A stretch of DNA of 64,000 nucleotides from Octopus sinensis (taxonomy: Eukaryota). The notes under the pieces are model-generated. The model did no database searches. It was not told the origin of the DNA and worked only from the letters and a program-made list of their open reading frames with translations. Below, in pieces: positions 22,488 through 42,496 of the stretch (the stretch's first letter is position 1; each line of letters starts with the position of its first letter). The DNA lies in NCBI RefSeq assembly GCF_006345805.1, contig NC_043009.1, forward strand, positions 61,504,001 to 61,568,000, written 5' to 3'. A program made the position numbers and the translations under genes.

Positions 22488-22832
22488 TTCTTTATGGGTC
22501 AAAAACTTGGAGGGTTACCAAAGCCATAAAGAGTAAGCTACATGAAATGTCTGTGCTACATGCTCAGGATCTGGAAGTCAGACAAAATTTCAAACAGTGG
22601 GATAGAACGAACCAAAACTCTCAATAATCAAGAAATTTTGGAAAGGAAATGGGGCTGGATTGGTTACACTTTGAGGAGACCCCCAAGTAGCATTTCAAGA
22701 CAAGTGTTAAACTGGCAACTTGAAAGAAAGAGGAAAATTGGATGACCTAAGAAGACTTGGAGAGGATGTGTGGAGAATGAAACAAAAGCAATTGGTCTCC
22801 CTTGGTCTGAAATCAAAGAGGTAGCCCAATAT
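22488..22832 (+). mobile_element. RTE-clade LINE 3' ORF fragment
   Basis: LLYGSKTWRVTKAIKSKL..KCLCYMLRIW...RKWGWIGYTLRRPPSSISRQVLNWQLERKRKIG*PKKTWR. Confidence 0.85.
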
Positions 22833-22834
22833 TG

Positions 22835-23176
22835 GAGCACCGCCTTTAGTCGAGCAAATCGACCTCAGGACTTATTCTTTGTAAGCCTAGTACTTATTCT
22901 ATCAGTCTCTTTTGCCAAACTGCTAAGCTACGGGGACGTAAACACACCAGCATCAGTTGTCAAGTGATGTTGGGGGGGACAAACACAGACACACACACAC
23001 ATACATATACATATATACGACGGGCTTCTTTCAGTTCCCATCTACCAAATCCACTCACAAGGCTTTGGTTGGCCTGAGGCTATAGTAGAAGACACTTGCC
23101 CAAGGTGCCACGCAGTGGGACTGAATCCAGAACCATGTGGTTGGTAAGCAAGCTACTAACCACACAGCCTCTCCTA
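22835..23176 (-). mobile_element. SINE family A
   Basis: Reverse complement of family A, tail truncated. Confidence 0.9.
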
Positions 23177-23883
23177 CGTCGAGTTTATTTCAGATATTCT
23201 CACTATAAAAATCATCTCTTGCTAATCGTTGAGAGGACATTGGTGTTGTCTTGGTGGAGGTTTGCGCTCTCTGAGTGCCTTGTTTATTTTTAGAATGACA
23301 AGAATGTCCACTTTACAGAAGTTACTGGGTTCAACTATCATGGAATTTAAAGTTTTGATTATATTCTCCTCATTTGTCTGCTATTAATATTTGTATATTT
23401 GGCCAGACATTGAACCTGAGACTTTATTTTATCAAGTGGGTCTGATGTTCTAACCACTGGACTAAGATCCTTAAATGATAGACTGAAAAATTCTCTCCAT
23501 ATCTGTTAGTGTATTAGACTATGTTAATAATATCCAATACACTTTTTGATAAAATAAAGGATCTAGGTCCAATCTATATCCTAGTTCATGAATATCCCCT
23601 GAAAATAATGAAAGAAAATATGAATTAAAATTTTGTGTAGATAGTCAGGAAAACAGACATGTCTACAAACACATCTCAGAAAAAATATATTGACTGCACT
23701 GTAATCCACTCCTTGTATATCACCACCATATTACAATAATATAAACAGTACATTATACTATCAATATACCATTAAACTATTCATTCCTGGTCTATTCTGT
23801 TTCCAATGACCTGTACTTTCTGATTAGAACTATTCAACAACAACCCTAGTTATAACAGCAGGATTCACAAGAAAGATTATCTG

Positions 23884-24250
23884 AGTGGCTGTGTGGTAAG
23901 TAGCTTGCTTACCAACCACATGGTTCCAGGTTCAGTCCCACTGCGTGGCACCTTGAGCAAGTGTCTTCTACTATAGCCTCAGGCCGACCAAAGCCTTGTG
24001 AGTGGATTTGGAAGATGGAAACTGAAAGAAGCCTGTCGTATATATGTATATGTATATATATGTGTGTGTTTGTCCCCCACAACATCGCTTGACAACCGAT
24101 GTCCCCGTAACTTAGCAGTTCGGCAAAAGAGACGGATAGAATAAGTACTAGGCTCACAAAGAATAAGTCCTGGGGTTGATTTGCTCAACTAAAGGCGGTG
24201 CTCCAGCATGGCTGCAGTCAAATGACTGAAACAAGTAAAAGAGTAAAAGA
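23884..24250 (+). mobile_element. SINE family A, full length
   Basis: Complete head to gagtaaaagag tail. Confidence 0.9.
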
Positions 24251-24704
24251 GAGAGAGTAAGAGAGTGATCACTTGATCTGAAAAATCAGCAAATGTCTCT
24301 GTCTCTCAACAAACATCTGAAATCATAAACTCTATATTAAGTTCTAAATTTTAGAACATGTCCTACAATAAATATGGTTAGACCACTCATAAAACTTTCT
24401 AGTTTATTTTATGTGCTACTCCAGCTTTGCTATGCCTGTACATCAGGTTGATAATCCTGTTTGTTGAGTAATTTATCTTTGTCAGACTGATCTGTTCTAC
24501 CAGATTTGATCATTAGTATTTAACAATGTTATCAAGAGAAATTCCGAGAATAACCTAATTTCTATAATCATTCAGGCAATATTATCATTCTTTTAAAATC
24601 TCTTTTACAGCTTCTCAATGTTGGAATTTTTCTATTATTCAAAGAATATTTTGAGAATAATATGGTTGATGTATTCTTGTTAATATTATTTGAAAGTAAG
24701 GCAG

Positions 24705-24932
24705 CGAGCTGGCAGAAACATTAACACACCGGGCGAAATGCTTAGTGGTATTTTGTCTGTCTTTACGTTCTGAGTTCAAATTCTGCCGAGGTCGACTTTG
24801 CCTTTCATCCTTTTGGGGTCAATTAAATAAGTACCAGTTACGCACTGGGGTCGATGTAATCGACTTAATACCTATGTCTGTCCTTGTTTGTCCCCTCTAT
24901 GTTTAGCCCCTTGTGGGTAGTAAAGAAATAAG
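24705..24932 (+). mobile_element. SINE family E
   Basis: Matches 16285-16523 in reverse; partial tandem copy at ~24945-25080. Confidence 0.88.
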
Positions 24933-26439
24933 AACTACTAGCACAATGGACAAAATGCTTGGCAGCATTTTGTCTGTGTTCAAATACCACTGGGGTAAAT
25001 AAAATAAGTACCAGTTGCGTACTAGGGGCGATATAATCAACTAGCACCCTCCTCTGAAACTGCTGGCCTTGCGCCAAAATTTGGAACCAATATTATTTGA
25101 AAGTGACAGTTGGGTGTTTGAAATGTTAGAATATCTGACAAATTGCCATGACAATATTTAATTTTATGACCTCAAAGGTTGGTGTACAAGTTCCATAAGA
25201 AATCAATAGGTTTAGGAACAAGTGAGGAGAAAATATAACTGAGAAGATTGTCATGACATGGTTTCAGTCCAAAGTTGAATTCCTCACACATCTGTAAAAT
25301 GGTTAATGCCCTTGAGAAAAAAACAGGAATGCTATATAAAAATGTTGTGTGTTCTCTGAGACTAAATGTCTTGCATTATTCAGTTTTGTTTCTCTAGATT
25401 CTAGCTGCCAATCAAGATTAAACCTTGCCTTTCCTCCCTCAAGAATATAATAATAACCATAGAAAATAGAATCAATTCTTTCACAAAAACTGATACGGAA
25501 ATCAATGCTTTTCAGGGGAAATAAAAGTTGAGAAAATAACATTAAGGCTAAGAATTGTGAATTTCCATAACTTATTCTTTTTACCAAGTACATCTTTTCA
25601 ACAGCAGGGTTAAATGGATGTACTTGTTAAAGAAGTCAGGAGCAACAGTTTTTTTTTTTAGAAGTCATTGATTGAAATTCTTTCTTTATTTCTTTGCTTG
25701 CATCTTTGTTATATTTCAGTTCAGAATTGTTAAAAAAAGAAACTTTGATTCTTTTGAGTATTGCACTTTGTCTGAACTCTCTACAGTAAACACAATGTTA
25801 AGCTATTAATTCTTGACTTAAGAGCTTGTATAATATCACAATATCACAAGCATTTAATCTATACCTTTAGGCCAGTCACTCAACTACCACTTTCCTCAAA
25901 TTATCAGCCTCCAAAATAAAGATATTTATGGCAGGGAAAATGTGTGTGAGAGTGCTATGAAGGTAGTCTATAAATGTTGAAGCAATCATCTAAAAAGAGT
26001 TTTTGACTCCATGTTGAATCTAGAAGGCCTTATAGAAATAGCATTATTGCTGTGTAAATGTTAAATGAAATAATAATGATTCGGGGAAGAGAAAATAAAA
26101 TATGTTCGTTAAAAAATTCTTCCTAGTTGGCATTTTGGAGAGAAAATTTAATCAATTTATTCATTCTTGAAAAAAAATCCTTTTTACAACAGCCATCTTT
26201 TTTCCCCCCAACAACCGTCTGCTGAATATTTCAGTAACAAAGAAACATCTGGCAGAACAGCAAACATTGATCTGCATTTCATTTGCTAAAGACGTATATG
26301 TATTCGTTAGGTTTTCCTAATACCCGTTCTTGAGTTTTAATACCGAAATTGAAATTCAGAAGAGACGAATTAGAGAAGGGAAATAAATAATGGTTATTAA
26401 TCTTTTCCCCCAAACCTAAAAATAACAAATAGTCATTTG

Positions 26440-26490
26440 TCTAACAAGGGAGACAACTCTGAGCCTGTTAGATGGCGGCAAGTGGTGGTG
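26440..26490. promoter_or_regulatory. Putative promoter element (YY1-like AGATGGCGGC)
   Basis: AGATGGCGGC at 26470-26479 in a CpG-containing, repeat-free patch. Confidence 0.35.
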
Positions 26491-26932
26491 AAGCCATTTA
26501 TTATATACGTTCACCAGTCACTCCTATTAAAATATCGTTTTATTACACATTTTCGACTTTATTCGGTCGTTTTCCCTACTCTTTATTATTTTCAAAAAAT
26601 AAATCATTAATCTAAGTATACATATGAGAAAATAAAAGACAATTTAAGAACGATTTCAGTTGCTTTATGGTATTTGTATGTGTGTATGTTTTTTAGATTT
26701 TAGAAACTGTTTTTTAGAGGCTGACGACATGTGTTCTTATTACTCACACATTCTGACTGAATTTCTGATTAAGGCGGTTAGGTTAGAGGAGAATAGAGAT
26801 TGAAGTATGGAAGCTAGGAAACATTTTTTAAAAAATAAAATAATCGAAAACAGGTCATTTAATAATATTTTATATAAAATATTCAAGAATGAATACACAT
26901 TTTTTAAATATAATTATTTATACCAATATATG

Positions 26933-26990
<58 letters not shown>

Positions 26991-27869
26991 TGTTATATTG
27001 TTCATATGAAAAATTTCATTATAATTCTGAAGTCTGGTTATAAAACCTTGATGGAAAAATTTGACCATTATATTTTATTTCTACATATTTTCTCCCCATC
27101 TGCCTTGAACAAACAAGGAAACATATAAAGAAGGAAGTCTGTAGTTTAATATATGTCGATTAAAAAAAAGAAATATTTTCAGCAAATAGTCTTAAAATGT
27201 AAAGAAGTAATTTATGAAGGAATGGTTAAAGGGAACGAATTATTACAGGATTTTAAACAGATTTACGCAATTATAACGTGTCACTTTAGCTCTATTCTAG
27301 TCAATTCTTTTCTCCCCTTCCTTTTTTGTTCTCCATCTGGAGATTACCAGACTAAATTTACAGTTTGAGGCAAAAAATAAAACTAAATAGAGGAAGGAAG
27401 TAGCTTTATTCTTACTATTATCATTATTATAATTTTGAAATTAAGAGAGGATGAGTTAATTAATCACAAAGCACACAGACACACACACATATATATATAT
27501 ATATGTAAATTTATATATATATATATATGTTTGTGTGTGTGTGTGTGTGTATAAATGATTTCTGAATCCCCAATTTATTGACTGATTAATTCTAGTTTCG
27601 CTTGAGCCCCTTCAAAGTTTTGAGCTCTTGCTGACCGGCGACAAGCACAAAATATATGTATGTGTGTTTATCAATAAAAACGGTGTGTTTATGAATTTCG
27701 TGTCTTCACACTTATAGGCGTATGTGCTGTATGTGTATGTATATGTGTGCGTGTGTGTGTGTGTTTCAGCGGAGCCACATCGGCCCAGACACATACACAC
27801 ACACACACACGCATATACGCGCAAAGGCAGCAGATAGAAACACATGAGTTACACACTAACACACACACT

Positions 27870-27959
27870 AATTGACGCACATGCGCAATTTCATATCCTA
27901 TGCGATCATGGCGTCGATGGAATGACTTTCCTATTTCATTTTGAGGATATTTGGTAAGT
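27870..27959 (+). promoter_or_regulatory. Putative promoter and short first exon with 5' splice site
   Basis: NRF1-like GCACATGCGC at 27877-27886, CpG cluster, TTG|GTAAGT donor at 27954-27959. Confidence 0.45.
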
Positions 27960-28044
27960 AATGTTTGTTTCAAATCGATATACAGACTTAAGAAAAAACA
28001 AGTAGAAACATTGACAATTCAGCGGTGCCCGGTCTTATAAACTA

Positions 28045-29240
28045 TTGTCCAGTCTGACATTTTTTCCTTTTCAGTTTTTCTCTGCACATAAGACACTTGG
28101 AAAAAATTTTTTTTGTCTCCCTTCCTACCTCTGTCTCTTTCTCTCTCCTCTTTCTTATTTATCCTTATCTTCATTCCCCCTCTCTCTTATATATCCTTAT
28201 CTCTATTTTCCCCCTCTCTCTTATTCATCTATCTCTCTTTTCCCCCCTCACTATCACGCCCTTTTCTTCCTATCTCTCTCTATATTTTCTTTTTTCTCTA
28301 TTTCCGTTTCTTATCTTTGTCTCATTTCTCCCTTTTCTTTGTCTCATTTTTTCCTCTCATCTCCCTCAATATATCTCCACATCTATATATCTCTTCCTCT
28401 TTTTATCCTTTGTCATTCTCCCCTATCCCTTTCAGACCCCTTTACTCCTTTATTCTTTCCGGTGTTTTGCTGTTTCCCTCTCTCATACTTTCTTTTCCTC
28501 TCTTAACCATTATTAAAATCTATCCTCTCACTCCTCCCCGTCTTTCTCTCTCTCTCCCTTGTGTCTCTTCTCCAGCTTTGTCTCTACTTTCCTCCCTTCC
28601 TCTCTCTCACTCTTTCTTTGTTTCATCTCTCCGTCTATCCTTTCCTCCCTCTCTCTGTCTGTCTCTGTCTATCCTTTCCTCCCTCTCTGTCTGTCTCTGT
28701 CTATCCTTTCCTCCCTCTCTCTGTCTATCCTTTCCTCTCTCTCTCTGTCTGTTTCCGTCTATCCTTTCCTCCCTCTCTCTGTCTGTTTCTGTCTATCCTT
28801 TTCTCCCTCTCTCTGTCTCATTCTCTCCGTCTATCCTTTCCTCCCTCTCTCTGGTTCTTTGTCTCGGTCTATCCTTTCCTCTCTCTATGTCTCATTCTCT
28901 CCCTCTATCCTTTCCTTCCTCTCGCTGTCTTTCACCCTCCCCGTCTCTAACCTTCCCCCATGTCTCTTATTTACTTTCTCTTTCTTTCCTTTACTCTCTT
29001 CCTCACTCTCTTTCTGGTCATTACCTTTCTATCTCTTCCCTCCCCCACTAATTCTTTCATCTCTCACCTTTCTCTCCTCACTCTACTTGTCCTTCTCTTC
29101 CTCTTTCACTCTCACTCTCTCACTCATTACCCTTTTCTTTCTCTCTCTATCAATTCTCCATCCTCCCTTCTTCTCCCTCTCTCTCATTATTTATCATTAT
29201 ATTCGATCTAGCGCCTTCACATCTCTTCCGTTAAACCCAC
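28045..29240 (+). repeat. ~1.2 kb polypyrimidine (CT-rich) tract with internal minisatellite
   Basis: Near absence of G and low A; about 9 copies of a ~30-38 bp unit containing CTATCCTT at 28628-28920. Confidence 0.95.
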
Positions 29241-29458
29241 CCTTCCATCGTTCCATTCCAATCCACCTTAATCAAATACCCACCTCCTCTCCTACAGTAG
29301 CCCCACCAACTAACCGGCCGCGACTCCTTCAGATCGAACCTTTGCCGTTTCGATCTTCTTGACAACGGTCGTTACTCTTATCCCCCTCCCTATCTCCACT
29401 GTTGCTCTCTTGTGTGTGTATGTGTGTGGTATGTATGTATCTATGCATGTGTAATATA

Positions 29459-29501
<43 letters not shown>

Positions 29502-29827
29502 TACGTAAGACTCCAGTAATCATTTATAAAACGACTCCAGTCGAACATCATTACCACCAGCCACCAGGAGGGGACGACCAACGGACTCACTCCTACCTGG
29601 TACTTCACAAACGTGTTCTAATAGTTGCAGCAACTAAAGCTGGTTACTTTGTACTTTGTCACTTGTTATCTCTCACACCTCAGTCTTCTGGCTTTTGTTT
29701 TGATGACTGATTTTCTCTCTTATTCTATCTATCTATCTATCTATCTATCACATACAAATGTAATATGTATATATTTGCATATATATATATATATATATAT
29801 ATACATACATACATATATACATACATA

Positions 29828-29858
<31 letters not shown>

Positions 29859-30644
29859 CCGGAGTAAACACATAAATGTGAAACAAGGTGGAAAAAAGAG
29901 TACTCAAATATATATATATATATATTATTACATTATATAAAAGGGCTTAGTAAAATAAATTACTTTGCCACATACTGAACTCATTAGAAATAGTAGCTAA
30001 AAAAACTTTTTAAAAACTATATATATATATACGTGTGTATATATTTGTATAAATATACACGTGTATATACGTGTGTGCATATATGTGTGTGTATATACAT
30101 GTGTATCTGCGGTACACTACACACACACAAATATTCAAACAGCTCACATTAATCTCCGGATATATATATATATATAAGAAAGAGCGATATATCAAACTGA
30201 ATTTCTCATGACCAATATCTAAATTCAACATCAGTTATTCCCAATAAGTTTACAAGAATCCTGTGTGTGTGTCTCTATCTGGCTGGTCTCTGGGAAGTTA
30301 TCTGAAGTTAATCCGACTGTTAGCTAACCACAGCTGTCAATAATAATAGTTACACTATGACAATAATGTCAATTATAGCATAACGAAAACATCAGCTACC
30401 GACTTCCGCATACATCATCCAACGACCCCCACATCATACACTTCACTTCAACGTTATAAAATACCCCCTTATATCTTTTTGTACGGTATCGACTACCCCA
30501 CTACTGCTGCTGCTCATATATCTTACTTCTCATGAAGAATCCAACCCTTATTTTTTATTATTATTACTAAAACATCGCCTTACCCACACATCAGTACTAT
30601 GAAATCAACTAACCCCTCAGACATCTCTATCAATTCAATTTATA

Positions 30645-31031
30645 CAGTCATGGGGAAATTTGCGGCCCGTGGGACTGTCTAACATGCGGCTCGCTTTTCG
30701 TAACCTGAAATACTCCCTTTTCATACAACAGTAACTGGTACATTAAATATCCCTGCTCAAACATCACCTACACACCATACATAACTATTATAACATTAAC
30801 CACTTCCCCATACACCAACTCTTTATAATCACCTACTTAATTGCCATACATTTGTAGTATAACATCAACTGCCACCCATACATTATTACTTTAACATAAA
30901 CTAGTCTTAGTAAGGCAAACTGCAGCCCGCTGGACTTTCTGAATAAGCACGCCTAACGAAAAATTTACCTTGAATTTTTCGAGAGCCCTGTCTCAGGCAG
31001 CCCGCTTCTCGAAAAAGGTTGCCCATATCTG
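30645..31031. mobile_element. hAT-like MITE remnants (gcggcccg type)
   Basis: Left cagtcatggggaaatttgcggcccgtggg, right aaaaaggttgcccatatctg; no matching 8-bp TSD. Confidence 0.5.
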
Positions 31032-31570
31032 AGATAGACGATTCCTCTACTCATTAATTACCGTTAAAACAAACTACCCCTCACATCACGAACTCGTTTC
31101 CCCATACACATTTTATTATAACATCAATTACACCTCATACATGTCTACCACATTAACCATCAACTACCCTCTTCATACATTACTACTCTAACAATACTGG
31201 CCTATTCTCATTCATCACCATGGCAAATAACTCCCCTTCGTACCTCACCATTATAACAAACTATCCCCACATATATCACAACTGTACACACAAAAACTAT
31301 AGCATAAACTCTCCCATTCACTCACATTTACTGCTCCCCACACATCAGTACATCAACTATTCCCCTATCACTACAAATCAGCTATATGCTCACATATATA
31401 CATACACCACACATATCTCACTTCAAAATCAACTACCCCTCCCAACAAATATATTTACAACATTAACTATCTCCCAAACACATTACAACTACCTCACACG
31501 CACACTGTTACACCAACTACATCCCATATACACCACCCTATGTACCATACAACATCCCCTACCTACCTAC
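30760..31570 (+). repeat. Degenerate A/C-rich minisatellite (~30 bp unit like cattactataacatcaactaccccatac)
   Basis: Recurring aacatcaacta and ccccatac motifs; strongly G-depleted strand. Confidence 0.6.
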
Positions 31571-31619
31571 CTACTTAGGGGACATCTGAGGGTGCTCGTC
31601 CTATTAGAAATAACAACCA

Positions 31620-31780
31620 ACTATCCCCCCAAATAGCACCCTACTTTTTACACGGATAAAAGGAAGCATCGCATAATGTAGTCATGAACTTGGATGGGTT
31701 GGTCGCGGCTAGATCGCTTTTGCTCCTCACATGGCTACTCGGTCAGGGTATATTTAGGGCTAAGCACATTCTCTAACATC
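31620..31780 (+). mobile_element. Decayed SINE-tail family G
   Basis: aaatagcaccctac...aaggaagcatcgcataatgtagtc; related copies at ~11200, 39430, 40740, 43960, 50520, 60250, 60880, 61340. Confidence 0.55.
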
Positions 31781-32214
31781 AGTTTAGACTCTCCCGCAGG
31801 CTATCGTTACTTTCCTCACTGAAAATCCAGCCGAATAGTCGAGCTTCTCATAAATACATGTTGCTTCCCGTAATAAACGTATGTTTTATATAATATAATA
31901 TATAATAATATAATCTAAGGAATTGGGAATCGATCCCCAGCCAGCTAAGATTGCGGCCCGGTTTCCATTTCCAGTTAAATATATTTCACCCCAAGATCTC
32001 AGTCCTGTCCTTTAGATGCATGTATATGAATAAATTCCATTTCCCTGTGTACCTTTAAAATGTTGAGGTTTTGTGTGCCTGTAATAAAGGAAAGAGGTTT
32101 ACATATCGTAACCCTAACCTTTTTCGTTTCTGAACACAAAGGAAGCAGTAAAAAAAAACGAAAAAAACCTCTAGCTATTAGAAATAATCTATAAAATAAA
32201 TTGTTTGCTGAGAA

Positions 32215-32241
32215 TGTGTGTGTGTATATATATATATATGC

Positions 32242-32272
<31 letters not shown>

Positions 32273-32274
32273 GC

Positions 32275-32321
<47 letters not shown>

Positions 32322-32346
32322 TGTATATATGTATACATATATATGC

Positions 32347-32381
<35 letters not shown>

Positions 32382-32500
32382 TGTATATATGTATACATAT
32401 ATATGCGTATATATATATATATACATATATATGCGTGTATATATATAATGTATATATATATATATAGATATAATATATATATATATATATATATACATAC
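32215..32500. repeat. Compound (TA)n microsatellite with TGCGTG interruptions
   Basis: Directly visible; other long TA/TG arrays at 26933-26990, 29450-29500, 33230-33430, 48250-48640, 49000-49200. Confidence 0.97.
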
Positions 32501-32981
32501 ACGACGAAATCAGGCTTTGAACCCGTTTCAGCTCCCAATTAGAATGGCATTCATTTCCGCTTCTCATATTTTGGGGAAAGGCATAAACGTTACAACAGCC
32601 TGTTTTCTGTTAGAAAATATCTCAAGCTTTTCAGAGGATTTTTTTTAATTATCCATTTATCTTTTTTTTGCTTCCCTAAAATTCATATGGTTTATATATT
32701 TTTTAATTTTTGCTTCATATTAAAACATTCTTTATGATGTATAAATATATATATATATATATATCATATGAGGAAAAAATATCTTGAAAGTCTTTCTTGT
32801 TTTATTTATTAACTTATTAAATTGCGCGGGTAGAAGAAGACTTGTTTTCCTGCCTGCTATTTTTCTCTTCTGTCTTTCCCCTGCTTTGCCTTGGCTGTGT
32901 ATGAGTAAGTTTTGCGTGTGTGTCTGGTGGGAATGTGTTTTGAAAAGCCTTGCTCTACGTACTGAAATGAAAATGGGTCAT

Positions 32982-32997
32982 CACTGACTGAACTGAC
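32982..32997 (-). promoter_or_regulatory. Initiator-like cluster (TCAGTT/TCAGTC/TCAGTG)
   Basis: - strand GTCAGTTCAGTCAGTG, tandem TCAKTY-like motifs next to a GA-rich tract. Confidence 0.4.
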
Positions 32998-33268
32998 ATG
33001 AGTGAGAGCGTGATCCGAACCAAAGCTCTTTCTCTTTCTATCTCTCTCTCTCTTTCTATCCACTTCTCTGCTTCAACCACTGTTAACTACTACCACCATA
33101 CTATTTCCTGCTATTCCTACTCCTCTTTCTTCACCTTTTGTTCTTCGTACGTTCGCTCGATCGCACATTGTTTTTTCATTAAAACATTTACTAATTTATA
33201 CAAGTCATGTGTGTGTCTGTATATACACTGCATTATATATATAAATATATATATTTATATATACCTAC

Positions 33269-33309
<41 letters not shown>

Positions 33310-34399
33310 CGCACTCAAATGCATCATATATTATATACATATATTTTCTATATATATATATATGTATATTTTAAATAAATAAATATATATATACACACAT
33401 AAATATATACGTGTGTGTGTGTGTGTGTATATAAAATTTATAATGGAAAATATCCGAGAGAAGCCCGCCCGGGGTAAAACAATTTAGCGTGTGTGTGTGT
33501 GTCTGTGTGTTCTATACAACAGAAACCGACGAAAATGGGTCAGGCTGAGATATAACCAATCGGCACGTTTTTTTTTTCCTCCTATCCTGCTTTTGTGTTG
33601 GTTATATTTATTTATCACACACACACATACTACACAATTATATATATTATATTATATTTATATATATATAGGCGCAATAATAGGTAATATATATTTAATA
33701 GATATTTTGCTTCGTGAGATCTGAAGTGTGTTTCAATTAATTGAGGGAAAAATACTGTGCGACGGGGAACCCAAGTTACAGCAGAGAAAAACCCTTCACT
33801 TCTCTGCATATAGAGAATAATGTGGTGATAGTTAGTTATAAAGTAAAATGCACCCTAAAACATGTTAGAAAGTAGGGGTTGGTGGTGGTTTATTATTAAT
33901 AATTGTAATTATATTTAATAATAAAAAAACAAAAAGGCCCTTCCTCTACCCACTCTTAAAGTCAAAGTGAGTGCCGAGTCGCTTCCGTCGATTGATTTGT
34001 CTTTCTCAACCATGTGATATGGTGAAAGCTCTCTGTGTAATGTGTGTTTGTGTGTGTGTCGGTTTTTCAGAAATGTGGCCAATATGTTGGCTCTGGTTGC
34101 TGACTGTTTGATAAAGAGATAGCGACTGAGTGCGGTAGAGGCAGAGAAACAGCTCGATATATAGTGTAAAGTATGGTGGTGGTGGTGGAATGGACTGGGA
34201 GAAAGAAGAACCGATAAAGAGAAGAGAAAATAGCAAGATTTACAGGCACACACACATATATATATATATACACATATATATATATATATATACACATATA
34301 TATATGTATGTATGTGTGTTGGTTAAATGGAAAATAAAGATTGAGCGTTGTTGGAGTAGATTAGTAAACAGTGGTGATGGTGGTGGTGGGGGGAAAGTA

Positions 34400-35311
34400 G
34401 GTAGAGATAGAGTGAGAGTTTGTTTGTCGGCAGCGAGGGGGGGGAAGGAAGAGAGAGATGTGCTTGCCGATAGACAGAGAGGTAATAAGAGAGGATTGGT
34501 GGGAGAAGTAGCTAGATAGAGTGATGGTTAGTACGGAGTAGTGGGAGGAAATAGCTAGATAGATGTTATGCTTGGTTATATAGACAGCTAGATAAATAGG
34601 AAGGAGTAGTAGTGAGAGAAATAATAATAGCTAGAGGTAAATAGTGACGAATAGATGGTAAGTGTTGGTAACTGGAGATAGCGTGAGTGTAGTGTGTATG
34701 TATCTATGTAAATATTATATATATATATATATTTCGTATTACTCCTTAATACATATTTTACGAATTTAGTAAGGGTGATCGAAGAACAGTATGAGGGAGT
34801 AAAGTATGTAAGATTGTTAGGGAGGCGGTAATAGCTTGAATCATAGGTAATGAGTGAAATAGCTTGCTTATTGCCGAATTAGAGTGAGTGAGATATCGTC
34901 TGCAAACACTAGAAAATATGAGTGAGTGAGAGAAGGAAAGAGTATAATAACAGATTGTAGGTGAGATTTTATATGAGGGAGAGAGAGAGTAAAGCTAGAT
35001 AGATAAGGTAAGACGGTAGAGAAATATTCTGAGTGAAAGGGTTTTGAAGCAAGAAGGGAACGTAGAAATGTGCTGAGTGACAAGATAAAGAGAGCGGAAT
35101 GGAGACGTAGTATGGGTGAGAGAAAGAATAGTCTGAGTAGGGAATGTATGAGAGAGAGAGAGAGAGATTAAGAAATATGTTGCTGGGAATTGAATAAATA
35201 GTTGTTAGAGAGGAGGGTGTGTTCACATAGAATAAAAAATACTATAAAGTATCTTGAGTGAGAGTTGATTAGAGATAGTTAGAGAGGATTATCTACCTAT
35301 CTATCTATCTA

Positions 35312-35347
<36 letters not shown>

Positions 35348-36000
35348 CACGTACATATATATAATCTCACCCCTCTCTATCTCCAATGTGTATTGTGTGT
35401 GTGTGTGTATATATATAGATATATAGTGAGAAGCGAGAGAGAAATAACACTATATTATGATAGAGAGGTAGGATGATAGGATGAAAGAGACATCAATCAA
35501 ATAGAGTGATTAATGAAGCATTAGAAATGAGAAATATAAATAGAGACGAGGAGAGAGATAGCATTGCTTGTAGAACTGGTAAGAGATAAATGAGGGTGCC
35601 AAGGAAAAAGATTAAAAGTAGTGCTGAAAGGAGGGAGAGATAAAGAGAACATTAGCGAGAAAGAAGTGGAAAGTGAGAGATTACAAGGAACGCTAGAGAG
35701 AGAGGATATATAGAGTGAGGGATAGAGGAGGAGAAGAGAAACTCGATTGGGAGAGGAGGAAAGAGTGATAAAAGTACGGAGAGAGAAGGCGGATTACAGA
35801 GTATACAGAGAGAGAGAGCGAGTGGATGTTAGAGAGTATATAGAGAGTGAGAGCGAGTGGATATTACAGAGTATACAGAGAGAGAGAGAGAGAGAGAGAG
35901 AGTGTGTGAGTGGATGTTAGAGAGTATATAGAGAGAGTGAGTGAGTGGATATTAGAGAGTAACAGATGTATAGAGCGGGGGGGTTAAGGAGAGTGCAAGC
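34400..36000 (+). repeat. Purine-rich (GA) low-complexity tract with degenerate tandem repeats
   Basis: C-depleted; gagtggat(g/a)ttagagagtatatagag units at 35800-35960. Confidence 0.9.
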
Positions 36001-36073
36001 TAGAAGGAAGGGTGATTAAGTGAGTGAAGCTTGCCTGCTGCTTGGCTGGCACGTCGGGAACGTAGTACTAGTT

Positions 36074-36201
36074 TATAATAAAACACCAAGGTTGCCTTAG
36101 TCGACGACCAGACAAATGGTGGGTTGAGTGGAACAACACTTTATACTACTGTTACTGACGACGACGACGTTGCTTCTACCTTCTCGCTGTGGAAAGTAAG
36201 T
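36074..36201 (+). promoter_or_regulatory. Putative TATA promoter and non-coding first exon
   Basis: TATAATAAAA at 36074-36083, CpG-rich exon-like stretch with an in-frame upstream stop and no usable ATG, AAA|GTAAGT donor at 36196-36201. Confidence 0.45.
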
Positions 36202-37079
36202 TTGTGGCTTGCTTTGACTTTTTTCTATTTATTTATTTATTTTCTGTTCCATGTATCTCTCCTCTCCTCTCTTCTCTCATTCTGCTTTTCTTTATTGTCG
36301 CCCTTAATAATAAGAAGTGGAGGAGCAGAAGGCGGCGGCGGCTTGTTGCCGGCTTGTTTTAAACGGTGATCACAAGAGATCTGTGACAGAAAACGGTCAT
36401 TTATTATCATCGTCACCAACAAGTACCACCACTAGCACACGAACATCAACAACAGTACCACTAGCATTACCGACCACCACTACTACCAACTAGCACCAAC
36501 ACTACAATCTCCTATCTCATCTGTCCCAAATTGACCTCTCTCTCTCTCTCTCTCTCTCTGTTCCCTCCATGTTGGTCCTCCATGTGATGATGTGAGCTAC
36601 ATAACAATGTTGCATGTATACGTGCGTGTGTGTGTGTATATAGTGGGGTCTATCGAAACAGGAATATGTTTTAGCAAAAAAGTCTAAGTACGCAGATTGA
36701 TTTTATATTTTTTTACAAACAGTCTTGAGACAGAGAGAGAAAGAGAAAGAGAGAGAATGAGTGATGTAGGTAGCAAAAAGCAAGACTTAGATATATTTAA
36801 TATTTAAGGGGTTGAAAAGAAAGGACTGATTTCTTTTAAACGAAAGATGTTAATGAACAAGGGTGCCGGAGGGAAAAAGAAAGCATGTTTTTTTCTTCCT
36901 CTCTCTCTCTGTAGCGTGGTGGTTCTATGATTTAGTCGTTTTGATTATTTACAACGAATCTCTTTATATATATATATATATAATATCGCTTCTCTCGTCT
37001 TCCTCTCACTCAATCTTCTCACTCTATCGCTATTTCTCTCTCTTTCACTTCCTTTCCTCTCTCTCTCTCTCTCCGTTTC

Positions 37080-37215
37080 TTTTACATACTCCCATCCCTC
37101 TCTATCCTCCCACCCTCCGTCTCTGTCTTTACATACTCCCATCCCTCTCTATCCTCCCACCCTCGGTCTCTCTCTGTCTTTATATATTCTCATCCCTCTC
37201 TATCCTCCCACATTC
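37080..37215 (+). repeat. Three-copy ~47-51 bp minisatellite
   Basis: catactcccatccctctctatcctcccaccctc(c/g)gtctctgtcttta repeated. Confidence 0.9.
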
Positions 37216-37569
37216 TATCTCTCTTCCTGTCTTCCACCTCTACTATCTACCCTCTCCTCTCTCTCTCTATCTCAGAGAGAGACAAGTACTATGTATCTGT
37301 GTCTCTAAGTTCAACGAGTTCTTGTTTTGTTTATTTAAGATTTTCTTGAGTTTTTCTTTTTTAAAGTTTCGGGGGTCTGTTTTATTGTTACTCAACTCCT
37401 CACACATTCCGTACTTAAATATTGTGTGTCACATATTGGGAGCAGTGGGGGAGGAGACTATTAATTATTATTATAATAAAAGAAACCATTATTATCAATA
37501 TTCTCCAAGTATATTTTGTTAAAAAAGGTAGGTGAGGGTGGTGATCGCGACCCGAACGAATGGCCTTAC

Positions 37570-37705
37570 TTTTCAGCATGTGCCCTGCAAACCGAGGAAT
37601 ATACAGCTGAGAGAAAGCACTCTTCTTGGTAGTCATTGTGTTCCTGGATCTGTAGGGTTCCTTGATTGGCCCTAGACGACGGGCTCCTTTATGGGTTTTC
37701 ATCAT
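37570..37705 (-). CDS. Candidate first coding exon MMKTHKGARRLGPIKEPYRSRNTMTTKKSAFSQLYIPRFAGHMLK
   Basis: ATG to AAAA|GTAAGG donor (37564-37569), 45 codons plus 1 nt; complex sequence amid low-complexity DNA. No homology recognised. Confidence 0.35.
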
Positions 37706-38983
37706 ATATATATATCTACATTGTGTATTTTTTTTATTCCATTTCATTCGGGGTTTTTTATGTACCCTCCCTTAACTTTATTTTCTGTAACCTTTCCATA
37801 TAACAATAATACCTCCTTCTTCATTCGCCCAGTTTGTGGCAGAAATAAAGAAAATATTATCAGTTTTAAATTTGCAGACGGTATATGCAAATAATTGTCT
37901 TGATCGTGTGTATTTATGATGTCCCTAATATAATGTTGCCATTTGAGTCTTAAATCTGAACTAAATTCTCTCGCACCCCCCTCTCTCTCTCTACACACAC
38001 ACACTTATTATAATGGTTTTGAGTATAACTCTGAAGATCGATCTAGATAAATTCAATATACACATGTTAAAAGTGATCATATATATTTCACTGAGAATTA
38101 ACACAAGCACACACACATATACGCGTGTAAATGTGTGTGTGTGTATATATGAGTGTATGTATGTATATATAATATATATATATTATATATTTATTTTATA
38201 TACATACATATATATTACATATATATGTTGTATGTGTGTATATGTATGTACGTATGTAAGTTATATGTGTGTGAAAGTTAAAGGAGAGAGCAGCCATGCC
38301 AATGAAACAGTACAGTTAGATTTAACAAACCGCCTTCTTTCTTGCTTTTTAAAACAGCTCAAAATGAAAAACGTTGCTCATTTTCTACACTTCTCATCAC
38401 CCCAATGAATTACACAGTACATTATATATACTTATATATACACACTATATATATAGTGTGTGTGTGTTCACAGAGTTGTGAAGGTATGCAATAGGCAAGC
38501 TTTTCAATGAAAGCAATGCTTTGCTACTTTCACCAAAGAACGGTTTCTCTCTCTCACACACACACAGGCGCTCTTGACTTGGCTGCCTTGCTCTGTCTCT
38601 TGGCTTTTCTCGACGAAATATCTTTCCATCAACTCGACTTCTTAACTGAAAAATTAATTATTTTAAGCTATATATTTACAAGATTTTATCACATACACAC
38701 ACGCGCACAAGACTATGCTTGTATGTATGTATATATCTTTATATTTATATGTATATATATATATATTTATCGACTTATTGCCGTGCCTTTGCGTACAGTC
38801 ATTCATACACCGTGTTACGTATCATACATATATTGTTGCTGCTGCTCATTGTTGGTTCTGTTTGTTTTTATTATTTACCGCGATTAATATCGCTCACACA
38901 TTTCCATCAACAATCGCACACACGCATGCAATTATCAGAAGATACTCCCCTCCCACTTTAATTACAGTATGTAAATTAATTAC

Positions 38984-39190
38984 CAAAGCTTGGTAGAAAA
39001 CTGTATATGCGTGTACACGCACAAACGTATGTATGTGCGCACACACACGCACGCACTCGCGCGCGAAGTCGATGATTCATTCTTCTGAGCTACTCGGAGT
39101 TTCTCGCAATATGCTTGCTTGTTCGGGTTTTTTCTTTCTCTTATTGCGCAAAACTCCGAGTTGCCACAGAGTGAATCATCAACTTTTATA
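38984..39190 (-). promoter_or_regulatory. Putative TATA promoter and non-coding first exon
   Basis: TATAAAAG at 39183-39190 on -, CA about 28 nt downstream, CpG-rich body, TTG|GTAATT donor at 38978-38983. Confidence 0.45.
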
Positions 39191-40136
39191 CAAACATATA
39201 AACTCTGATTTTATTGTTAGAACCCTCTTATTTTTCTCGTTTTGTAACCCCCAAACGTGGTGCGTGTGTGTAATCACGCACTCACGTTCAGAATAAAACG
39301 TTCCATGATTTTAATAATAATTATTAAAAAAATTATTCCCCCAAAATATTTTTTTAATCTAAATTTTCTTTTCATAGGTTTTTTACCTATCTTGTTACTT
39401 GTAGGTAATGATCTAAGTTACAGCAATAATATCTAGCTTGTTTAGTTTCCCAGGTCAGCTATGTCTGAGCGAATCTACGATCAAAGGCATTCCAGAAATG
39501 ACAATCCCGTCCTCCTCTCGTGCTTTGTGTATCTAGGACTACATTCTCTAGTATGTGTTTGCCCTTTCGAGACACCTTAAAGTGTAATTTCGGTGCTATT
39601 TCAGGCAGGTTCAGCGACCACATAAAGCTCTCTCGTTGGCCAGTAATACATTATAATAATCAACCACACTAATTATACATGGTCATGGAGATGTTTAGCT
39701 TATATCATCATTATCAAGAATGACTTTGGCTGGACAACACAGTGTCTCTCGCCTCAGTCATTCATTATGTGATATACAATAGAGAACAGAACCCATCCGA
39801 AAGTTTGTTGTTTGTGCGTGGCATGGTGGCTTTTACAGTTGGACGCTTTTCCTCTCACCAACCATTTCCACTGAGATGTGCTTGGTGCATTTTATCATGT
39901 CACCGGCACTGGAGGAATTGTTTGCGATAGGAATATCAGTTTTTCTTCAGAAATACTGCTGTCCTTATCAATGTATACACGCACGCACAATTATACAGAC
40001 ATTTAATTGTGTTTAGAGTTCCATTTATTGTATAAAAAGGTTACTTTATTTTTCAGAGTTATTGGAATATTATGAAAATGAATCCTATTTCTGCCCACCC
40101 TTACACACGCCCCCTTTGGTCCCTTCGTATTAGCTG

Positions 40137-40508
40137 TGAGTGGCTGTGTGGTAAATAGCTTGCTTACCAACCACATGGTTCCGGGTTCATTCCCACTGCG
40201 TGGCACCTTGGGCGAGTGTCTTCTACTATAGCCTCGGGCCGACCAAAGCCTTGTGAGTGGATTTGGTAGACGGAAACTGAAATAAGCCCGTCGCATATGT
40301 GTGTGTGTGTGTCGGTTTGTCCCCACCCCCAACATCGCTTGACAACCGATGCTGGTGTGTTTACGTCACCATAACTTAGCAGTTCGGCAAGAGACCGATA
40401 GAATAAGTACTAGGCTTACAAAGAATCAGTCCTGGGGTCGATTTGGTCGACTAAAGGCGGTGCTCCAGCATGGCCACAGTCAAATGACTGTAACAAGTAA
40501 AAGAGTAA
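40137..40508 (+). mobile_element. SINE family A, full length
   Basis: Complete head to tail; more diverged copies at ~41195-41590, 45425-45585, 47528-47695. Confidence 0.9.
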
Positions 40509-42235
40509 GGAATTGGTTAATGTTTGGTTGTAGCCTTAAATATAAAATCAAGAAATGTGAGTACAAGACATTAGGATGTTGGCTTGGTATCACCATGGTT
40601 ACTAGATGATAAAAAATTTAATTTTTATCATATTTAAATAATCTTGTTTTGTCCCTTTGTGTTCTGAATTCAGTCCTTCCTCAGATCAATTTTTCTATCT
40701 TATCCTGTAGTTCATTGTCAATGAAGCAACAGCCAAGTACTTGTTTTGGTTAATGCTGTTGATGTCTCTGATGATGACTGTCGGAAGTCTTGTTGCTTAG
40801 CCCCAGGCTATGGTCACTGATCAAAGGCACACTAGCCATACCCACTCACTGATGTGTGCTTCCCTCTTTCAAGAAGGTAGTGTGATATGAGAGAGAGACT
40901 TGCTGTTATTTCTAGCTAGCTGTACAACCACAGAGAGGTTCATGTCAGACGTGTGTCAACCGTGTTCCCACACCTCATTCTAATAAACTGTTCTAAATAT
41001 GTTTTATCTGTTGTACATAATAATGGTCAAAACAATCACTGTTTAGGGGGTTCAAAGCTGTGCTCCTAAACAAATGATGCATTGATGTCTTCCTCCAGTA
41101 TTGATCAGCTTTGCAGGGTTCAGCTAAAACAATCCATTTTCTTTTCATGTTCAAAGTATTTTAAATAATTATTGTCATGTAGATTTAAGTGCAGACATGG
41201 CTGTGTAGTTAAAGAAACCTGCTTTGTTACCACATGGTTTCGGGTTTGGTTCCACTGTGTTGCCTGTTTGATAAGTGTCTCCTGCTACAGCCCTAACTGA
41301 CCAAGGTCTTGTGAGTGGATTTGGTTGATGGAAACTGTTTAAAAGCCCGTTGTGCACATGTGTGTGTGTGTGTGTCTTTGTGTTTATGCCCCCATGTCGC
41401 TTAACAACTGGAACCGGTTTGTTTACATTCCTATAACTTAGCAGTTCAGCAAAAGAGACTGATAGAGTAAGTATTAGACTTCAAAGAAGTACTGGGGGTG
41501 GGGGCAATCCATTCAACTGAAACCCTTTAAAGCAATGCCCCAGCATGGCCGCAGTCCAGTGATTGAAACAGTAAAAAAGTAAAAGAAAGCTGGATTGATT
41601 ATGTTTTGTAAGACTTCAAGTTTAGGCTAAGATCCTGCTTTTGTTGTATGGGTGGACAGATCGTAGGAAGTGATTTGATTGATTTACTTGTGTTAGGTAG
41701 AGAGCCGATATGTTGGAGTGGCTGGAATATTGGTTAGTGGCTCCTTCAGTAAGCTCAGAATGTAATGTAGAAGCTGAACTTCTATTAGTTCAGCTATGGT
41801 TAAGCTATCATACTCTGCTGGTTGATGAAGTACTGTGTTGACTGCGGTGTGTTAGCATCGAATGGTTAAAAACTGGGTTGTCATCTCATCACAGACAACA
41901 CCTCTGTGTTCATTGACAAGATTGATTAATATAATTACCTCAGTCTGCTTTACTGTAAAGAAAGAGTGGAAATTCTTCATTTGTTCCATTTTTTTAGTTT
42001 CTTTTTTTTATTGCTTAGACAGGAAGGAAAAATAGATGCTAATAAACCCAAGGTCTAGGAGACAGGTGAAAGGAAAGGTTGGCTGGAGGAGAAAACTTAT
42101 CCACAGACCAAAGACCTGGCTCAAATATTTGCAATGGAATTCCTCTAAAGACACTCATGGACAAAAGGGTAGTACCAAACGACAGATCAAGTCTGCTACC
42201 CAAGAACTGAGAAGGCAAAGAGTTGGAACAAATAT

Positions 42236-42496
42236 TGTCTGTGCCGGTGGCACGTAAAGAGCACCAACCGATCGTGGCTGTTGCCAGCCTCACCTGGCAC
42301 CTGTGCCAGTGGCACATAAAATGCACCCACTACACTCACGGAGTGGTTAGCATTAGGAAGGGCATCCAGCTATAGAAACACTGCCAGATCAGACTGGAGC
42401 CTGGTGCAGCCTCCTGGTTTCCCAGACCATGGTCGAACCGTCCAACCCATGCTAGCATGGAAAGCGGACGTTAAACGATGATGATGATGATGATGA
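42236..42496 (+). mobile_element. SINE family B with (GAT)n tail
   Basis: ...gaaagcggacgttaaacgatgatgatgatg. Confidence 0.88.

What the first reader, a model, noticed from the sequence alone, without database searches (positions are those of the whole stretch)
25100..39400. 14-kb SINE desert with many candidate promoters on both strands
Flanks carry a SINE or MITE about every kb, but here there is only one decayed SINE tail and hAT remnants. CpGs are visibly more frequent, and TATA/Inr motifs and strong donors cluster (27954+, 29585-, 32982-, 33966+, 36196+, 37564-, 38978-). This suggests a constrained multi-promoter hub feeding the - strand gene and a long + strand gene.
Basis: partly seen in the sequence, partly recalled or inferred. 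Interest (0 to 1): 0.7.

Follow-up and report, generated by a model that had tools for sequence, protein, structure and literature searches.

The report
Unmethylated, transposon-free, simple-repeat-rich DNA domain
This is a 14.5-kb stretch that has escaped germline DNA methylation and transposon insertion and sits between two methylated, SINE-filled gene-body blocks, which is the ordinary mosaic pattern of an invertebrate (apparently octopus-like) genome and not a demonstrated cluster of promoters.

Summary
The compositional observation is real; the motif evidence offered for promoters is not. A two-state HMM places a CpG-preserved domain at 26,042-40,494 (CpG o/e 0.70, against 0.28 in the flanking blocks). 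The flanks show the matching TpG/CpA excess and the domain does not. SINE copies serve as internal clocks. Young flank copies (96-98% identical to consensus) have lost about 55% of their CpG sites to TG/CA, while the older copy at the domain edge keeps 79%. The repeat-free gap (24,931-40,136; 15.2 kb) never arose in 20,000 permutations, although an 11-kb gap also lies at 2.8-13.9 kb. The 'TATA' excess is (TA)n microsatellite and vanishes after masking. Donor, CCAAT and Inr motifs are at or below flank density. No ORF in the domain has credible homology. 28% of the domain is low-complexity sequence, with strand-biased CT-rich and GA-rich minisatellite blocks that explain a striking GC-skew flip. 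The best reading is an unmethylated intergenic or 5' domain between methylated gene bodies, as described for octopus (PMC9476566). Strand asymmetry in the flanks suggests transcription diverging from it, so one or two promoters are plausible (the best candidates end at 27,954+ and 36,196+). A constrained multi-promoter hub is not supported.

The parts
26042..40494 (.). Germline-hypomethylated (CpG-preserved) domain, 14.45 kb
   Evidence: Two-state HMM on CpG/(CpG+TpG+CpA): index 0.159 inside and 0.049-0.061 in the methylated blocks. Maximum-likelihood change points 26,273 and 40,475, log-likelihood gain 90.9. CpG o/e 0.70 inside and 0.28 in the blocks. The excess survives dust masking.
24931..40136 (.). 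Gap free of dispersed repeats (SINE/LINE-derived), 15.2 kb
   Evidence: Self-BLAST repeat map and permutation test, 0 of 20,000 placements; SINE copy list.
28000..29400 (+). Pyrimidine-rich block (purine fraction 0.13-0.27) built from a CT-rich minisatellite of about 34 nt
   Evidence: TRF arrays 28,134-28,249 and 28,626-28,930; composition; autocorrelation at lags 4 and 34, z 6-7.6.
30300..31650 (+). G-poor (8.7% G, 30% C), non-periodic, cryptically simple block
   Evidence: Composition and k-mers CATACA/ACATCA; no periodicity above controls; no Pfam or mitochondrial-code ORF signal.
32225..33409 (.). Large (TA)n/(TA)nGCGTG microsatellites (32,225-32,499 and 33,234-33,409) at the GC-skew switch; the source of most 'TATA' matches
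   Evidence: TRF; motif counts before and after masking.
34000..36000 (+). Purine-rich block (purine fraction 0.63-0.77; C 5-9%), including a 35-nt GA-rich minisatellite at 35,793-35,966 that is the inverted relative of the CT-rich family
36969..37274 (+). CT-rich minisatellite (47-51-nt unit), same family as the 28.5-29.2 kb block
   Evidence: TRF 37,081-37,211; 63-66% matches to 28.5-28.8 kb in direct orientation.
36051..36196 (+). Best candidate promoter plus non-coding first exon: CpG peak, TTTATAATAAAA at about 36,072, donor AAA|GTAAGT at 36,196 (inferred only)
   Evidence: Sequence read; site context; CpG peak 36,051-36,350 with 15 CpG, o/e 1.10.
27651..27954 (+). Second candidate first exon: CpG peak followed by donor TTG|GTAAGT at 27,954 (inferred only)
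37565..37700 (-). Candidate - strand first exon (CCAAT box, ATG, 22 codons, donor AAAAG|GTAAGG at 37,564); coding status unsupported
   Evidence: No Pfam hit. The only HMMER hit is a translated tandem repeat, and the match runs past the donor.
39001..39300 (.). CpG-densest 300 bp (22 CpG, o/e 1.61), containing an imperfect hairpin with a stem of about 46 bp at 39,065-39,187
   Evidence: Fold: dG -51.4 kcal/mol, z -6.5. Isolated, with no hairpin enrichment in the domain.
40137..40511 (+). tRNA-derived SINE copy at the right edge that keeps 15 of 19 consensus CpGs despite 93.4% non-CpG identity; it marks the methylation boundary
   Evidence: SINE CpG clock.
31599..31693 (.). Old decayed repeat fragment (72% identity to the flank repeat at 50,917-51,598)
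   Evidence: Sensitive BLAST of flank repeats against the domain.
39819..39912 (.). Old decayed fragment of a second repeat family (70-74% identity to four flank copies)
17171..26015 (-). Left CpG-depleted (germline-methylated) block; - strand transcription inferred from AT skew
   Evidence: HMM; SINE copies at 18.6, 22.8 and 23.9 kb keep only 44-47% of CpGs at 96.5-97.8% non-CpG identity; AT skew positive in 5 of 5 bins over 14-24 kb.
40514..63997 (+). Right CpG-depleted (germline-methylated) block; + strand transcription inferred from AT skew
   Evidence: HMM; SINE CpG loss; AT skew negative in 6 of 6 bins over 40.5-52.5 kb; SINE orientation 11+/2-.

Best explanation
The interval is one unmethylated compartment of a mosaic, gene-body-type invertebrate methylome.

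Shown:
- The DNA on both sides (17.2-26.0 kb and 40.5-64 kb) has been methylated in the germline, so its CpGs, including those of inserted SINEs, have decayed to TpG/CpA.
- The 14.45-kb domain at 26,042-40,494 has not been methylated and keeps CpG near the expected frequency.
- The domain is old DNA made largely of (TA)n and (TG)n microsatellites, CT/GA-rich minisatellites in both orientations, and cryptically simple sequence. These produce its GC-skew flip and its many 'TATA' strings.
- It has almost no SINE- or LINE-derived insertions.

Inferred:
- The domain is the intergenic and/or 5' region between two transcription units that run outward from it (- strand on the left, + strand on the right). 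[quoted passage not shown]
- It probably holds one or a few promoters. The best candidates are the + strand first exons ending at 36,196 and 27,954.
- The lack of transposons reflects insertion or retention bias, or selection on that 5' region.

It is not a demonstrated dense promoter hub.
For: - CpG o/e is 0.70 in the domain and 0.28 in the blocks, with sharp boundaries.
- TpG/CpA excess is present only in the flanks.
- SINE CpG clock: flank copies at 96-98% non-CpG identity keep 44-47% of 19 consensus CpGs, with nearly all losses to TG/CA. The edge copy at 93.4% keeps 79%.
- The same mosaic is seen in a distant relative: L001 has o/e 0.03-0.4 over the orthologous gene, rising to 0.5-0.9 about 7 kb past its last exon.
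- The published octopus methylome has 5mC confined to the bodies of about 14,000 broadly expressed genes. Promoters, intergenic DNA and TEs are unmethylated. [quoted passage not shown]
- The repeat gap is significant.
- Two 70-74% decayed repeat fragments inside show that the DNA is old.
- Low-complexity fraction is 28% inside and 6% in the flanks. The skewed blocks are periodic minisatellites related only at 60-66% identity, in both orientations.
- AT skew in the flanks, calibrated on the + strand gene, points outward from the domain.
- CpG peaks lie just upstream of the + strand donors at 27,954 and 36,196.
Against: - No exon of either putative flanking gene was found, so the flanks are assigned to gene bodies only from CpG decay and strand skew.
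- A small hypomethylated patch at 14.8-17.2 kb carries several repeats, and the SINE at 40.1-40.5 kb lies in unmethylated DNA. Lack of methylation alone therefore does not explain the absence of transposons.
- The organism call (octopus-like cephalopod) rests on my recollection of the SINE and on the mosaic pattern, not on a database match.
- The edge SINE could belong to a different subfamily, which would weaken its use as a clock.
- No methylation, TSS or chromatin data were available.
Confidence: 0.72

Rival explanations
1. One reading: a selectively constrained multi-promoter hub, with many alternative first exons on both strands feeding a - strand gene and a long + strand gene, and transposons excluded by purifying selection.
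For: - Hypomethylated state.
- Outward-pointing strand asymmetry in the flanks.
- Five of seven flagged sites carry consensus-like donors, and two follow CpG peaks.
- A significant transposon gap.
- Class MP3 genes with a long unmethylated 5' third exist in octopus (PMC9476566).
Against: - The TATA excess disappears after microsatellite masking (0.78/kb inside, 1.25-1.37/kb in the flanks).
- Donor, CCAAT and Inr densities are equal to or below those of the flanks.
- 28% of the domain is fast-evolving simple sequence.
- The only candidate coding first exon has no credible homolog.
- There is no evidence of conservation (uninformative because of distance).
Confidence: 0.1
2. A plain unmethylated intergenic spacer with no promoter at all (for example between tandem or convergent genes). 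Its lack of transposons would come only from insertion-site or chromatin bias, or from rapid turnover of microsatellite-rich DNA.
For: - No promoter-motif enrichment.
- No exons or homologs in the domain.
- Intergenic DNA is unmethylated by default in octopus (PMC9476566).
- Simple repeats of every class are enriched 3- to 7-fold.
Against: - AT skew in the flanks points away from the domain on both sides, which needs at least one start site within or near it.
- CpG peaks are paired with strong + strand donors at 27,954 and 36,196.
- Elsewhere, unmethylated DNA in this window does carry repeats (14.8-17.2 kb; 40.1-40.5 kb).
Confidence: 0.15
3. Recently arrived DNA, too young to have lost CpGs or gained SINEs: a large non-autonomous transposon, a segmental insertion, an organelle insert or an assembly contaminant.
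For: - CpG near the expected frequency and no young SINEs inside.
- Sharp boundaries.
- Strong strand skew, as in organelle DNA.
Against: - Two repeat fragments decayed to 70-74% identity lie inside.
- There are no terminal direct or inverted repeats at the borders. The only paired repeats are ordinary SINE copies, which also match a third copy.
- No tRNA or rRNA genes and no Rfam hit.
- No Pfam or mitochondrial-code ORFs.
- G+C (36%) and the microsatellite types are the same as in the rest of the window.
Confidence: 0.02

Closest known systems
Unmethylated compartments of mosaic (gene-body) invertebrate methylomes, as mapped in Octopus bimaculoides (Macchi et al. 2022, PMC9476566)
   Same: CpG-depleted blocks alternate with CpG-preserved blocks across sharp borders. 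Methylated blocks coincide with a recognisable broadly expressed type of gene (an ELM2-SANT co-repressor), and depletion continues past its last coding exon, as in class MP2. The unmethylated block is of the kind expected for promoters, intergenic DNA or the first third of MP3 genes.
   Different: Methylation is inferred here only from CpG decay, not measured. The paper reports TEs as generally unmethylated and CpG-dense, whereas in this window the SINEs lie mostly inside decayed (methylated) blocks and the unmethylated block is nearly free of TEs.
Transposon-free regions (at least 5-10 kb) of vertebrate genomes, associated with developmental regulator genes
   Same: A transposon-free gap of more than 10 kb, statistically unexpected within transposon-rich surroundings.
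   Different: No developmental gene, conserved non-coding element or cross-species retention could be shown. A quarter of the interval is unstable simple sequence, which is not what a densely constrained regulatory block looks like.
Vertebrate CpG islands and DNA-methylation valleys/canyons
   Same: A long hypomethylated interval with CpG o/e of 0.7-1.0 within CpG-depleted surroundings, and poor in TEs.
   Different: G+C is not raised (36%, the same as the flanks). In this type of genome, lack of methylation is the default state and not a protected exception. No gene lies inside.
GC-skew (R-loop-prone) bidirectional promoters (Ginno et al. 2012; recalled from memory)
   Same: GC skew changes sign near 33 kb, with the G-rich strand pointing outward on both sides.
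   Different: The skew comes from CT/GA minisatellites and cryptically simple sequence spread over 2-5 kb. No G-quadruplex motifs occur in the domain, and AT skew inside the domain does not follow the flank pattern. There is no TSS evidence at the switch.

Membership tests
Unmethylated domain of a mosaic gene-body methylome | CpG o/e near the unmethylated expectation inside and strongly depleted outside, with reciprocal TpG/CpA excess outside | tested here: met
   o/e 0.70 inside and 0.28 outside; TpG/CpA o/e about 1.05 inside and about 1.3 outside; GpC control 0.82-1.06.
Unmethylated domain of a mosaic gene-body methylome | CpG-specific decay (not general age) distinguishes the compartments | tested here: met
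   SINE clock: flank copies at 96-98% identity keep 44-47% of CpGs; the edge copy at 93% keeps 79% and the copy at 15.3 kb (95%) keeps 84%.
Unmethylated domain of a mosaic gene-body methylome | Depleted blocks coincide with transcribed gene bodies | tested here: inconclusive
   True for the ELM2-SANT (MIER-like) gene at 1-14.8 kb and its ortholog in L001. No exons were found in 17-26 kb or 40.5-64 kb; only strand skew is available.
Unmethylated domain of a mosaic gene-body methylome | Direct measurement of 5mC | not testable with these tools
   No bisulfite or nanopore data could be reached.
Promoter cluster / multi-TSS hub | Core-promoter and first-exon donor motifs enriched over background | tested here: not met
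   After masking, TATAWAWR is 0.78/kb inside and 1.25-1.37/kb in the flanks. GTRAGT is 1.19/kb inside and 1.16-1.18/kb in the flanks. Donors at 8/9 or better are 0.62/kb inside and 0.71/kb outside. CCAAT and Inr are lower inside.
Promoter cluster / multi-TSS hub | Mapped transcription start sites or open chromatin | not testable with these tools
   No CAGE, ATAC or RNA data.
Transposon-free region under constraint | A transposon-free interval longer than expected by chance | tested here: met
   15,206-bp gap, 0 of 20,000 permutations.
Transposon-free region under constraint | Sequence and TE-free state conserved across species | tested here: inconclusive
   The only relative available (L001) aligns in exons only, at 84% and 66%; no closer genome was reachable.
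CpG island / methylation valley (vertebrate sense) | Raised G+C together with raised CpG o/e | tested here: not met
   G+C is 0.361 inside and 0.36-0.37 in the flanks.
Organelle-derived insert (NUMT) | Recognisable mitochondrial rRNA, tRNA or protein genes | tested here: not met
   No Rfam hit, no tRNA, no Pfam hit, and no mitochondrial-code ORFs of note.

The most novel reading that the evidence does not exclude
The domain is an actively protected regulatory compartment, for example a Polycomb/GAGA-factor-type or insulator-like block. On this reading, kilobase-scale GA/CT-rich minisatellites in mirror orientation around about 33 kb, together with several alternative first exons, organise divergent transcription of the two flanking genes, and selection keeps retrotransposons out. 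It would be a cephalopod counterpart of vertebrate transposon-free, hypomethylated 'valleys'.
Probability: 0.08. Interest if true: 0.55.

Novelty: new member of a known kind. Interest (0 to 1): 0.22.

Why it matters
Mainly as a calibration case. In genomes with gene-body methylation, CpG-rich, TE-poor intervals are the unmethylated default between methylated transcription units, so they should not be read as vertebrate-style CpG-island promoter clusters. In microsatellite-rich genomes, TATA-box counts are meaningless without masking. Two points could be worth a genome-wide follow-up. The first is the very sharp (under 500 bp) methylation borders that can be read from SINE CpG decay alone. The second is the apparent concentration of SINEs in methylated gene bodies while a neighbouring 14-kb unmethylated block stays nearly empty. 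If general, that would say something about retrotransposon targeting or retention in cephalopods.

Tried and rejected
1. NUMT or organelle insert, suggested by the strong GC skew: rejected. No Rfam or tRNA hits, and no Pfam or mitochondrial-code ORFs.
2. Ancient inverted duplication around 33 kb: rejected. There are only 60-66% matches between CT-rich minisatellites, in both orientations.
3. Large transposon with terminal repeats: rejected. The direct repeats at 24.0-24.25 kb and 40.25-40.5 kb are ordinary SINE copies that also match a third copy at 41.4 kb, and there are no other border repeats.
4. Coding first exon 'MTTKKSAFSQLYIPRFAGHMLK' at 37.6 kb (- strand), which I thought resembled ciliary FAM166/CIMIP2 motifs: no Pfam hit. 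The only exhaustive-search hit, P0004, is a translated perfect tandem repeat whose E-value comes from four identical 16/38 matches that extend past the donor.
5. The G-poor block at 30.3-31.65 kb as a decayed minisatellite: not supported by autocorrelation.
6. Hairpin or miRNA cluster: no enrichment (0.14/kb inside, 0.12/kb outside).
7. G-quadruplex or R-loop motifs: none in the domain.
9. Exon hunting in the flanks, by non-repeat ORF listing, composition-based ranking (the MIER exon control ranked first), Pfam and a last homolog search on 55,258-55,452(-): nothing found.
10. PDB search to name the left-hand gene: only weak SANT helix-3 matches to RERE, RCOR1 and MTA.

Full report
**What the window is.**
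The sequence is AT-rich (36% G+C) and full of (TA)n/(TG)n microsatellites. It carries many copies of a tRNA-derived SINE of about 370-385 bp (reference copy 40,100-40,520; consensus). From memory this SINE and the general style of the sequence are those of octopod cephalopods. No tool could confirm the species, so I treat that as probable, not proven.

The only recognisable gene is on the + strand at the left end. One exon (about 3,162-3,301) encodes helix 3 of a SANT domain. Its PDB matches are weak but consistent: RERE, RCOR1 and MTA1/3. A terminal coding exon follows at about 3,685-4,233. Its closest relatives in the 5.8-billion-protein collection are three ORF-level calls at no more than 62% identity. 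One of them lies on a 74-kb ENA contig, from which I fetched L001. L001 aligns to the window only in the two exons (84% and 66%) and in one short 3' piece, so it is too distant for non-coding comparison.

**Checking the observation.**
- *Repeat desert.* Self-BLAST shows that dispersed repeats cover 2.5% of 25,100-39,400, against 20% of the left flank and 29% of the right. After merging, there are 43 non-low-complexity repeat intervals. The largest gap between them is 15,206 bp (24,931-40,136), and 0 of 20,000 random placements reached it. A second gap of 11 kb (2,817-13,857) covers the terminal exons and probable 3' UTR of the SANT gene, so such gaps are not unique here. A sensitive search finds only two old fragments (70-74% identity) inside the domain, at 31,599-31,693 and 39,819-39,912.
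- *CpG excess.* CpG o/e is 0.66 in the stated interval, against 0.32 and 0.31 in the flanks, and this is unchanged by low-complexity masking. TpG and CpA are over-represented (about 1.3) only in the flanks. A maximum-likelihood two-change-point fit gives 26,273 and 40,475 (log-likelihood gain 90.9). A two-state HMM gives 26,042-40,494, plus a 2.3-kb patch at 14,808-17,152 and the coding exons at 3,147-4,303. The transitions occur within about 500 bp.
- *Motif clustering.* This claim fails. TATAWAWR is 34/kb inside and 6-7/kb outside, but after masking microsatellites it is 0.78/kb inside and 1.25-1.37/kb outside. GTRAGT donors are 1.19/kb inside and 1.16-1.18/kb outside. CCAAT and Inr matches are rarer inside. 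Donors with at least 8 of 9 consensus matches are 0.62/kb inside and 0.71/kb outside. Five of the seven listed coordinates do carry a good donor; 32,982- and 38,978- do not.

**What the domain is made of.**
- 28% is flagged as low-complexity, against 6% in the flanks.
- GAGAG+CTCTC, TATATA and (TG)n/(CA)n motifs are enriched roughly 2- to 10-fold, depending on motif and flank block.
  - a pyrimidine-rich block at 28.0-29.4 kb, built on a minisatellite of about 34 nt;
  - a G-poor but complex block at 30.3-31.65 kb;
  - a purine-rich block at 34-36 kb, with a 35-nt GA-rich minisatellite;
  - a further CT-rich minisatellite at 37.0-37.3 kb.
- The CT-rich and GA-rich arrays are one loose family in both orientations (60-66% identity). 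This is not an inverted duplication.
- The G-poor block has no periodicity above controls, no Pfam or mitochondrial-code signal, and a CATACA/ACATCA k-mer spectrum. I read it as cryptically simple sequence, but its origin is not explained.
- There are no Rfam families or tRNAs in the window. No G-quadruplex motifs occur in the domain, and hairpins are not enriched there.
- No ORF looks coding.

**Why CpG differs: methylation, shown through an internal clock.**
I built a CpG-aware consensus from nine SINE copies (19 CpG sites) and compared CpG retention with divergence at other sites.

| SINE copy | Location | Non-CpG identity | CpG sites kept |
|---|---|---|---|
| 18.6, 22.8 and 23.9 kb | flank | 96.5-97.8% | 44-47% (nearly all losses to TG or CA) |
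| 49.2 kb | flank | 96.2% | 32% |
| 40,138-40,510 | right edge of the domain | 93.4% | 79% |
| 15.3 kb | small hypomethylated patch | 95.3% | 84% |

The difference is therefore a 10- to 20-fold CpG-specific decay in the flanks. That is the signature of germline 5mC, and it is not an effect of age or base composition. L001 shows the same mosaic around the orthologous gene: o/e is 0.03-0.4 over the gene, rising to 0.5-0.9 about 7 kb past its last exon.

This matches the published octopus methylome (PMC9476566):
- Methylation is concentrated in the bodies of about 14,000 broadly expressed genes.
- Promoters, intergenic DNA and TEs are unmethylated.
- Gene classes include MP2 (body and downstream of the termination site methylated, TSS and promoter not) and MP3 (first third unmethylated, 3' part methylated).

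**Are there promoters?**
I could not find exons in either flank, so gene assignment is indirect. The evidence that bears on promoters is as follows.
- The known + strand gene has T>A on its sense strand. In L001 the AT skew is -0.07 in introns and -0.15 in the 3' region, and in the window it is mostly negative over 1-12 kb.
- In unique sequence, AT skew is positive in 5 of 5 2-kb bins over 14-24 kb and negative in 6 of 6 bins over 40.5-52.5 kb.
- Local CpG peaks lie just upstream of the + strand donors at 27,954 and 36,196. The latter also has a TTTATAATAAAA element about 125 nt upstream of the donor. These two are the best candidate non-coding first exons.
- The attractive-looking - strand exon at 37.6 kb (CCAAT box, ATG, 22 codons, donor) has no support. 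Pfam finds nothing. The single hit of an exhaustive HMMER search is a translated perfect tandem repeat, whose score sums four identical 16/38 matches that run past the donor.
- My chimeric-ORF search of the whole domain returned nothing, but it also lost its positive control, so it is uninformative.

**Verdict.**
Shown:
- a sharply bounded, germline-hypomethylated, old domain, nearly free of transposons and rich in simple repeats, between two methylated blocks;
- the TATA and donor 'clusters' are artefacts of microsatellites or sit at background level.

Inferred:
- the domain is the intergenic or 5' region of two diverging transcription units and holds one or a few promoters.

Not supported:
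- many promoters;
- selective constraint.

Unexplained:
- Why transposons are missing. Lack of methylation alone does not exclude them, because the patch at 14.8-17.2 kb and the edge SINE both lie in unmethylated DNA.
- Where the strongly strand-biased blocks came from.

This is an ordinary instance of a known kind of genome compartment, so the interest is low. The most novel reading still open is a protected regulatory block organised by GA/CT repeats, to which I give about 8%.

Noticed in passing
window 2817-13857: A second repeat-free gap (11 kb). Unlike the finding, it is CpG-depleted. It holds the last exons (about 3,162-3,301 and 3,685-4,233, + strand) and the probable long 3' UTR of an ELM2-SANT (MIER-like) co-repressor gene. 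A 100-bp piece at 8,754-8,852 is 74% identical to L001 13,227-13,320.
   Followed up: partly
window 14808-17152: A small hypomethylated patch inside the left flank (CpG o/e 0.54). It carries several repeats and TE-like ORFs, and its SINE copy (15,302-15,685) keeps 16 of 19 consensus CpGs. It could be an internal promoter, a boundary between two gene bodies, or an unmethylated TE cluster.
   Followed up: partly
window 39065-39187: An isolated, very stable imperfect hairpin (stem of about 46 bp, dG -51.4 kcal/mol, z -6.5 against shuffles) within the CpG-densest 300 bp of the window (39,001-39,300, o/e 1.61), next to a (CG)n/(CA)n run. It has no Rfam match. It may be a foldback or MITE-like element, or a structured RNA.
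   Followed up: partly
window 30300-31650: A 1.35-kb block with 8.7% G and 30% C. It is not flagged as low-complexity, and it has no tandem periodicity and no protein or organelle signal. Its k-mers suggest decayed (CATA)n/(CA)n-type cryptic simplicity, but the origin of the skew is unexplained.
   Followed up: partly
window 28100-29200 (+), 35790-35970 (inverted), 36970-37275 (+): One loose family of CT-rich minisatellites (units of 34-51 nt, core like CTATCCTYYCCYCCCTCKCTCTCTCTGTCT) occurs three times in two orientations within the domain and nowhere else in the window.
   Followed up: partly
window 40100-64000: Pieces of the main SINE family in the right flank are 11 in + orientation and 2 in - orientation, against 4+/2- in the left flank. 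This may be an orientation bias relative to a + strand host gene.
   Followed up: no
window 477-659 and 20684-20797: Tandem arrays of a 26-nt unit (GCACCAGTGCCTCTTACATGGCACCA). They appear to be part of a second dispersed repeat family, other parts of which recur at 14.7, 20.3, 51.1 and 62.6 kb and translate to '...NLDLAEFLQLDALPNA...'. A decayed fragment of this family lies at 39,819-39,912.
   Followed up: no
window 13060-13260, 14835-15089, 22481-22742: ORF fragments that by eye resemble LINE reverse-transcriptase or C-terminal regions (for example '...LYGSKTW...', '...WGWIGYTLRR...'). Pfam gave no hit at E<=1.
   Followed up: partly
L001 17000-20528: In the distant relative, CpG o/e rises from below 0.3 to 0.5-0.9 about 7 kb downstream of the orthologous last exon. 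Gene-body-type CpG depletion with a sharp 3' border is therefore shared between the two species. Unlike the window's domain, that CpG-rich tail is not rich in low-complexity sequence.
   Followed up: partly
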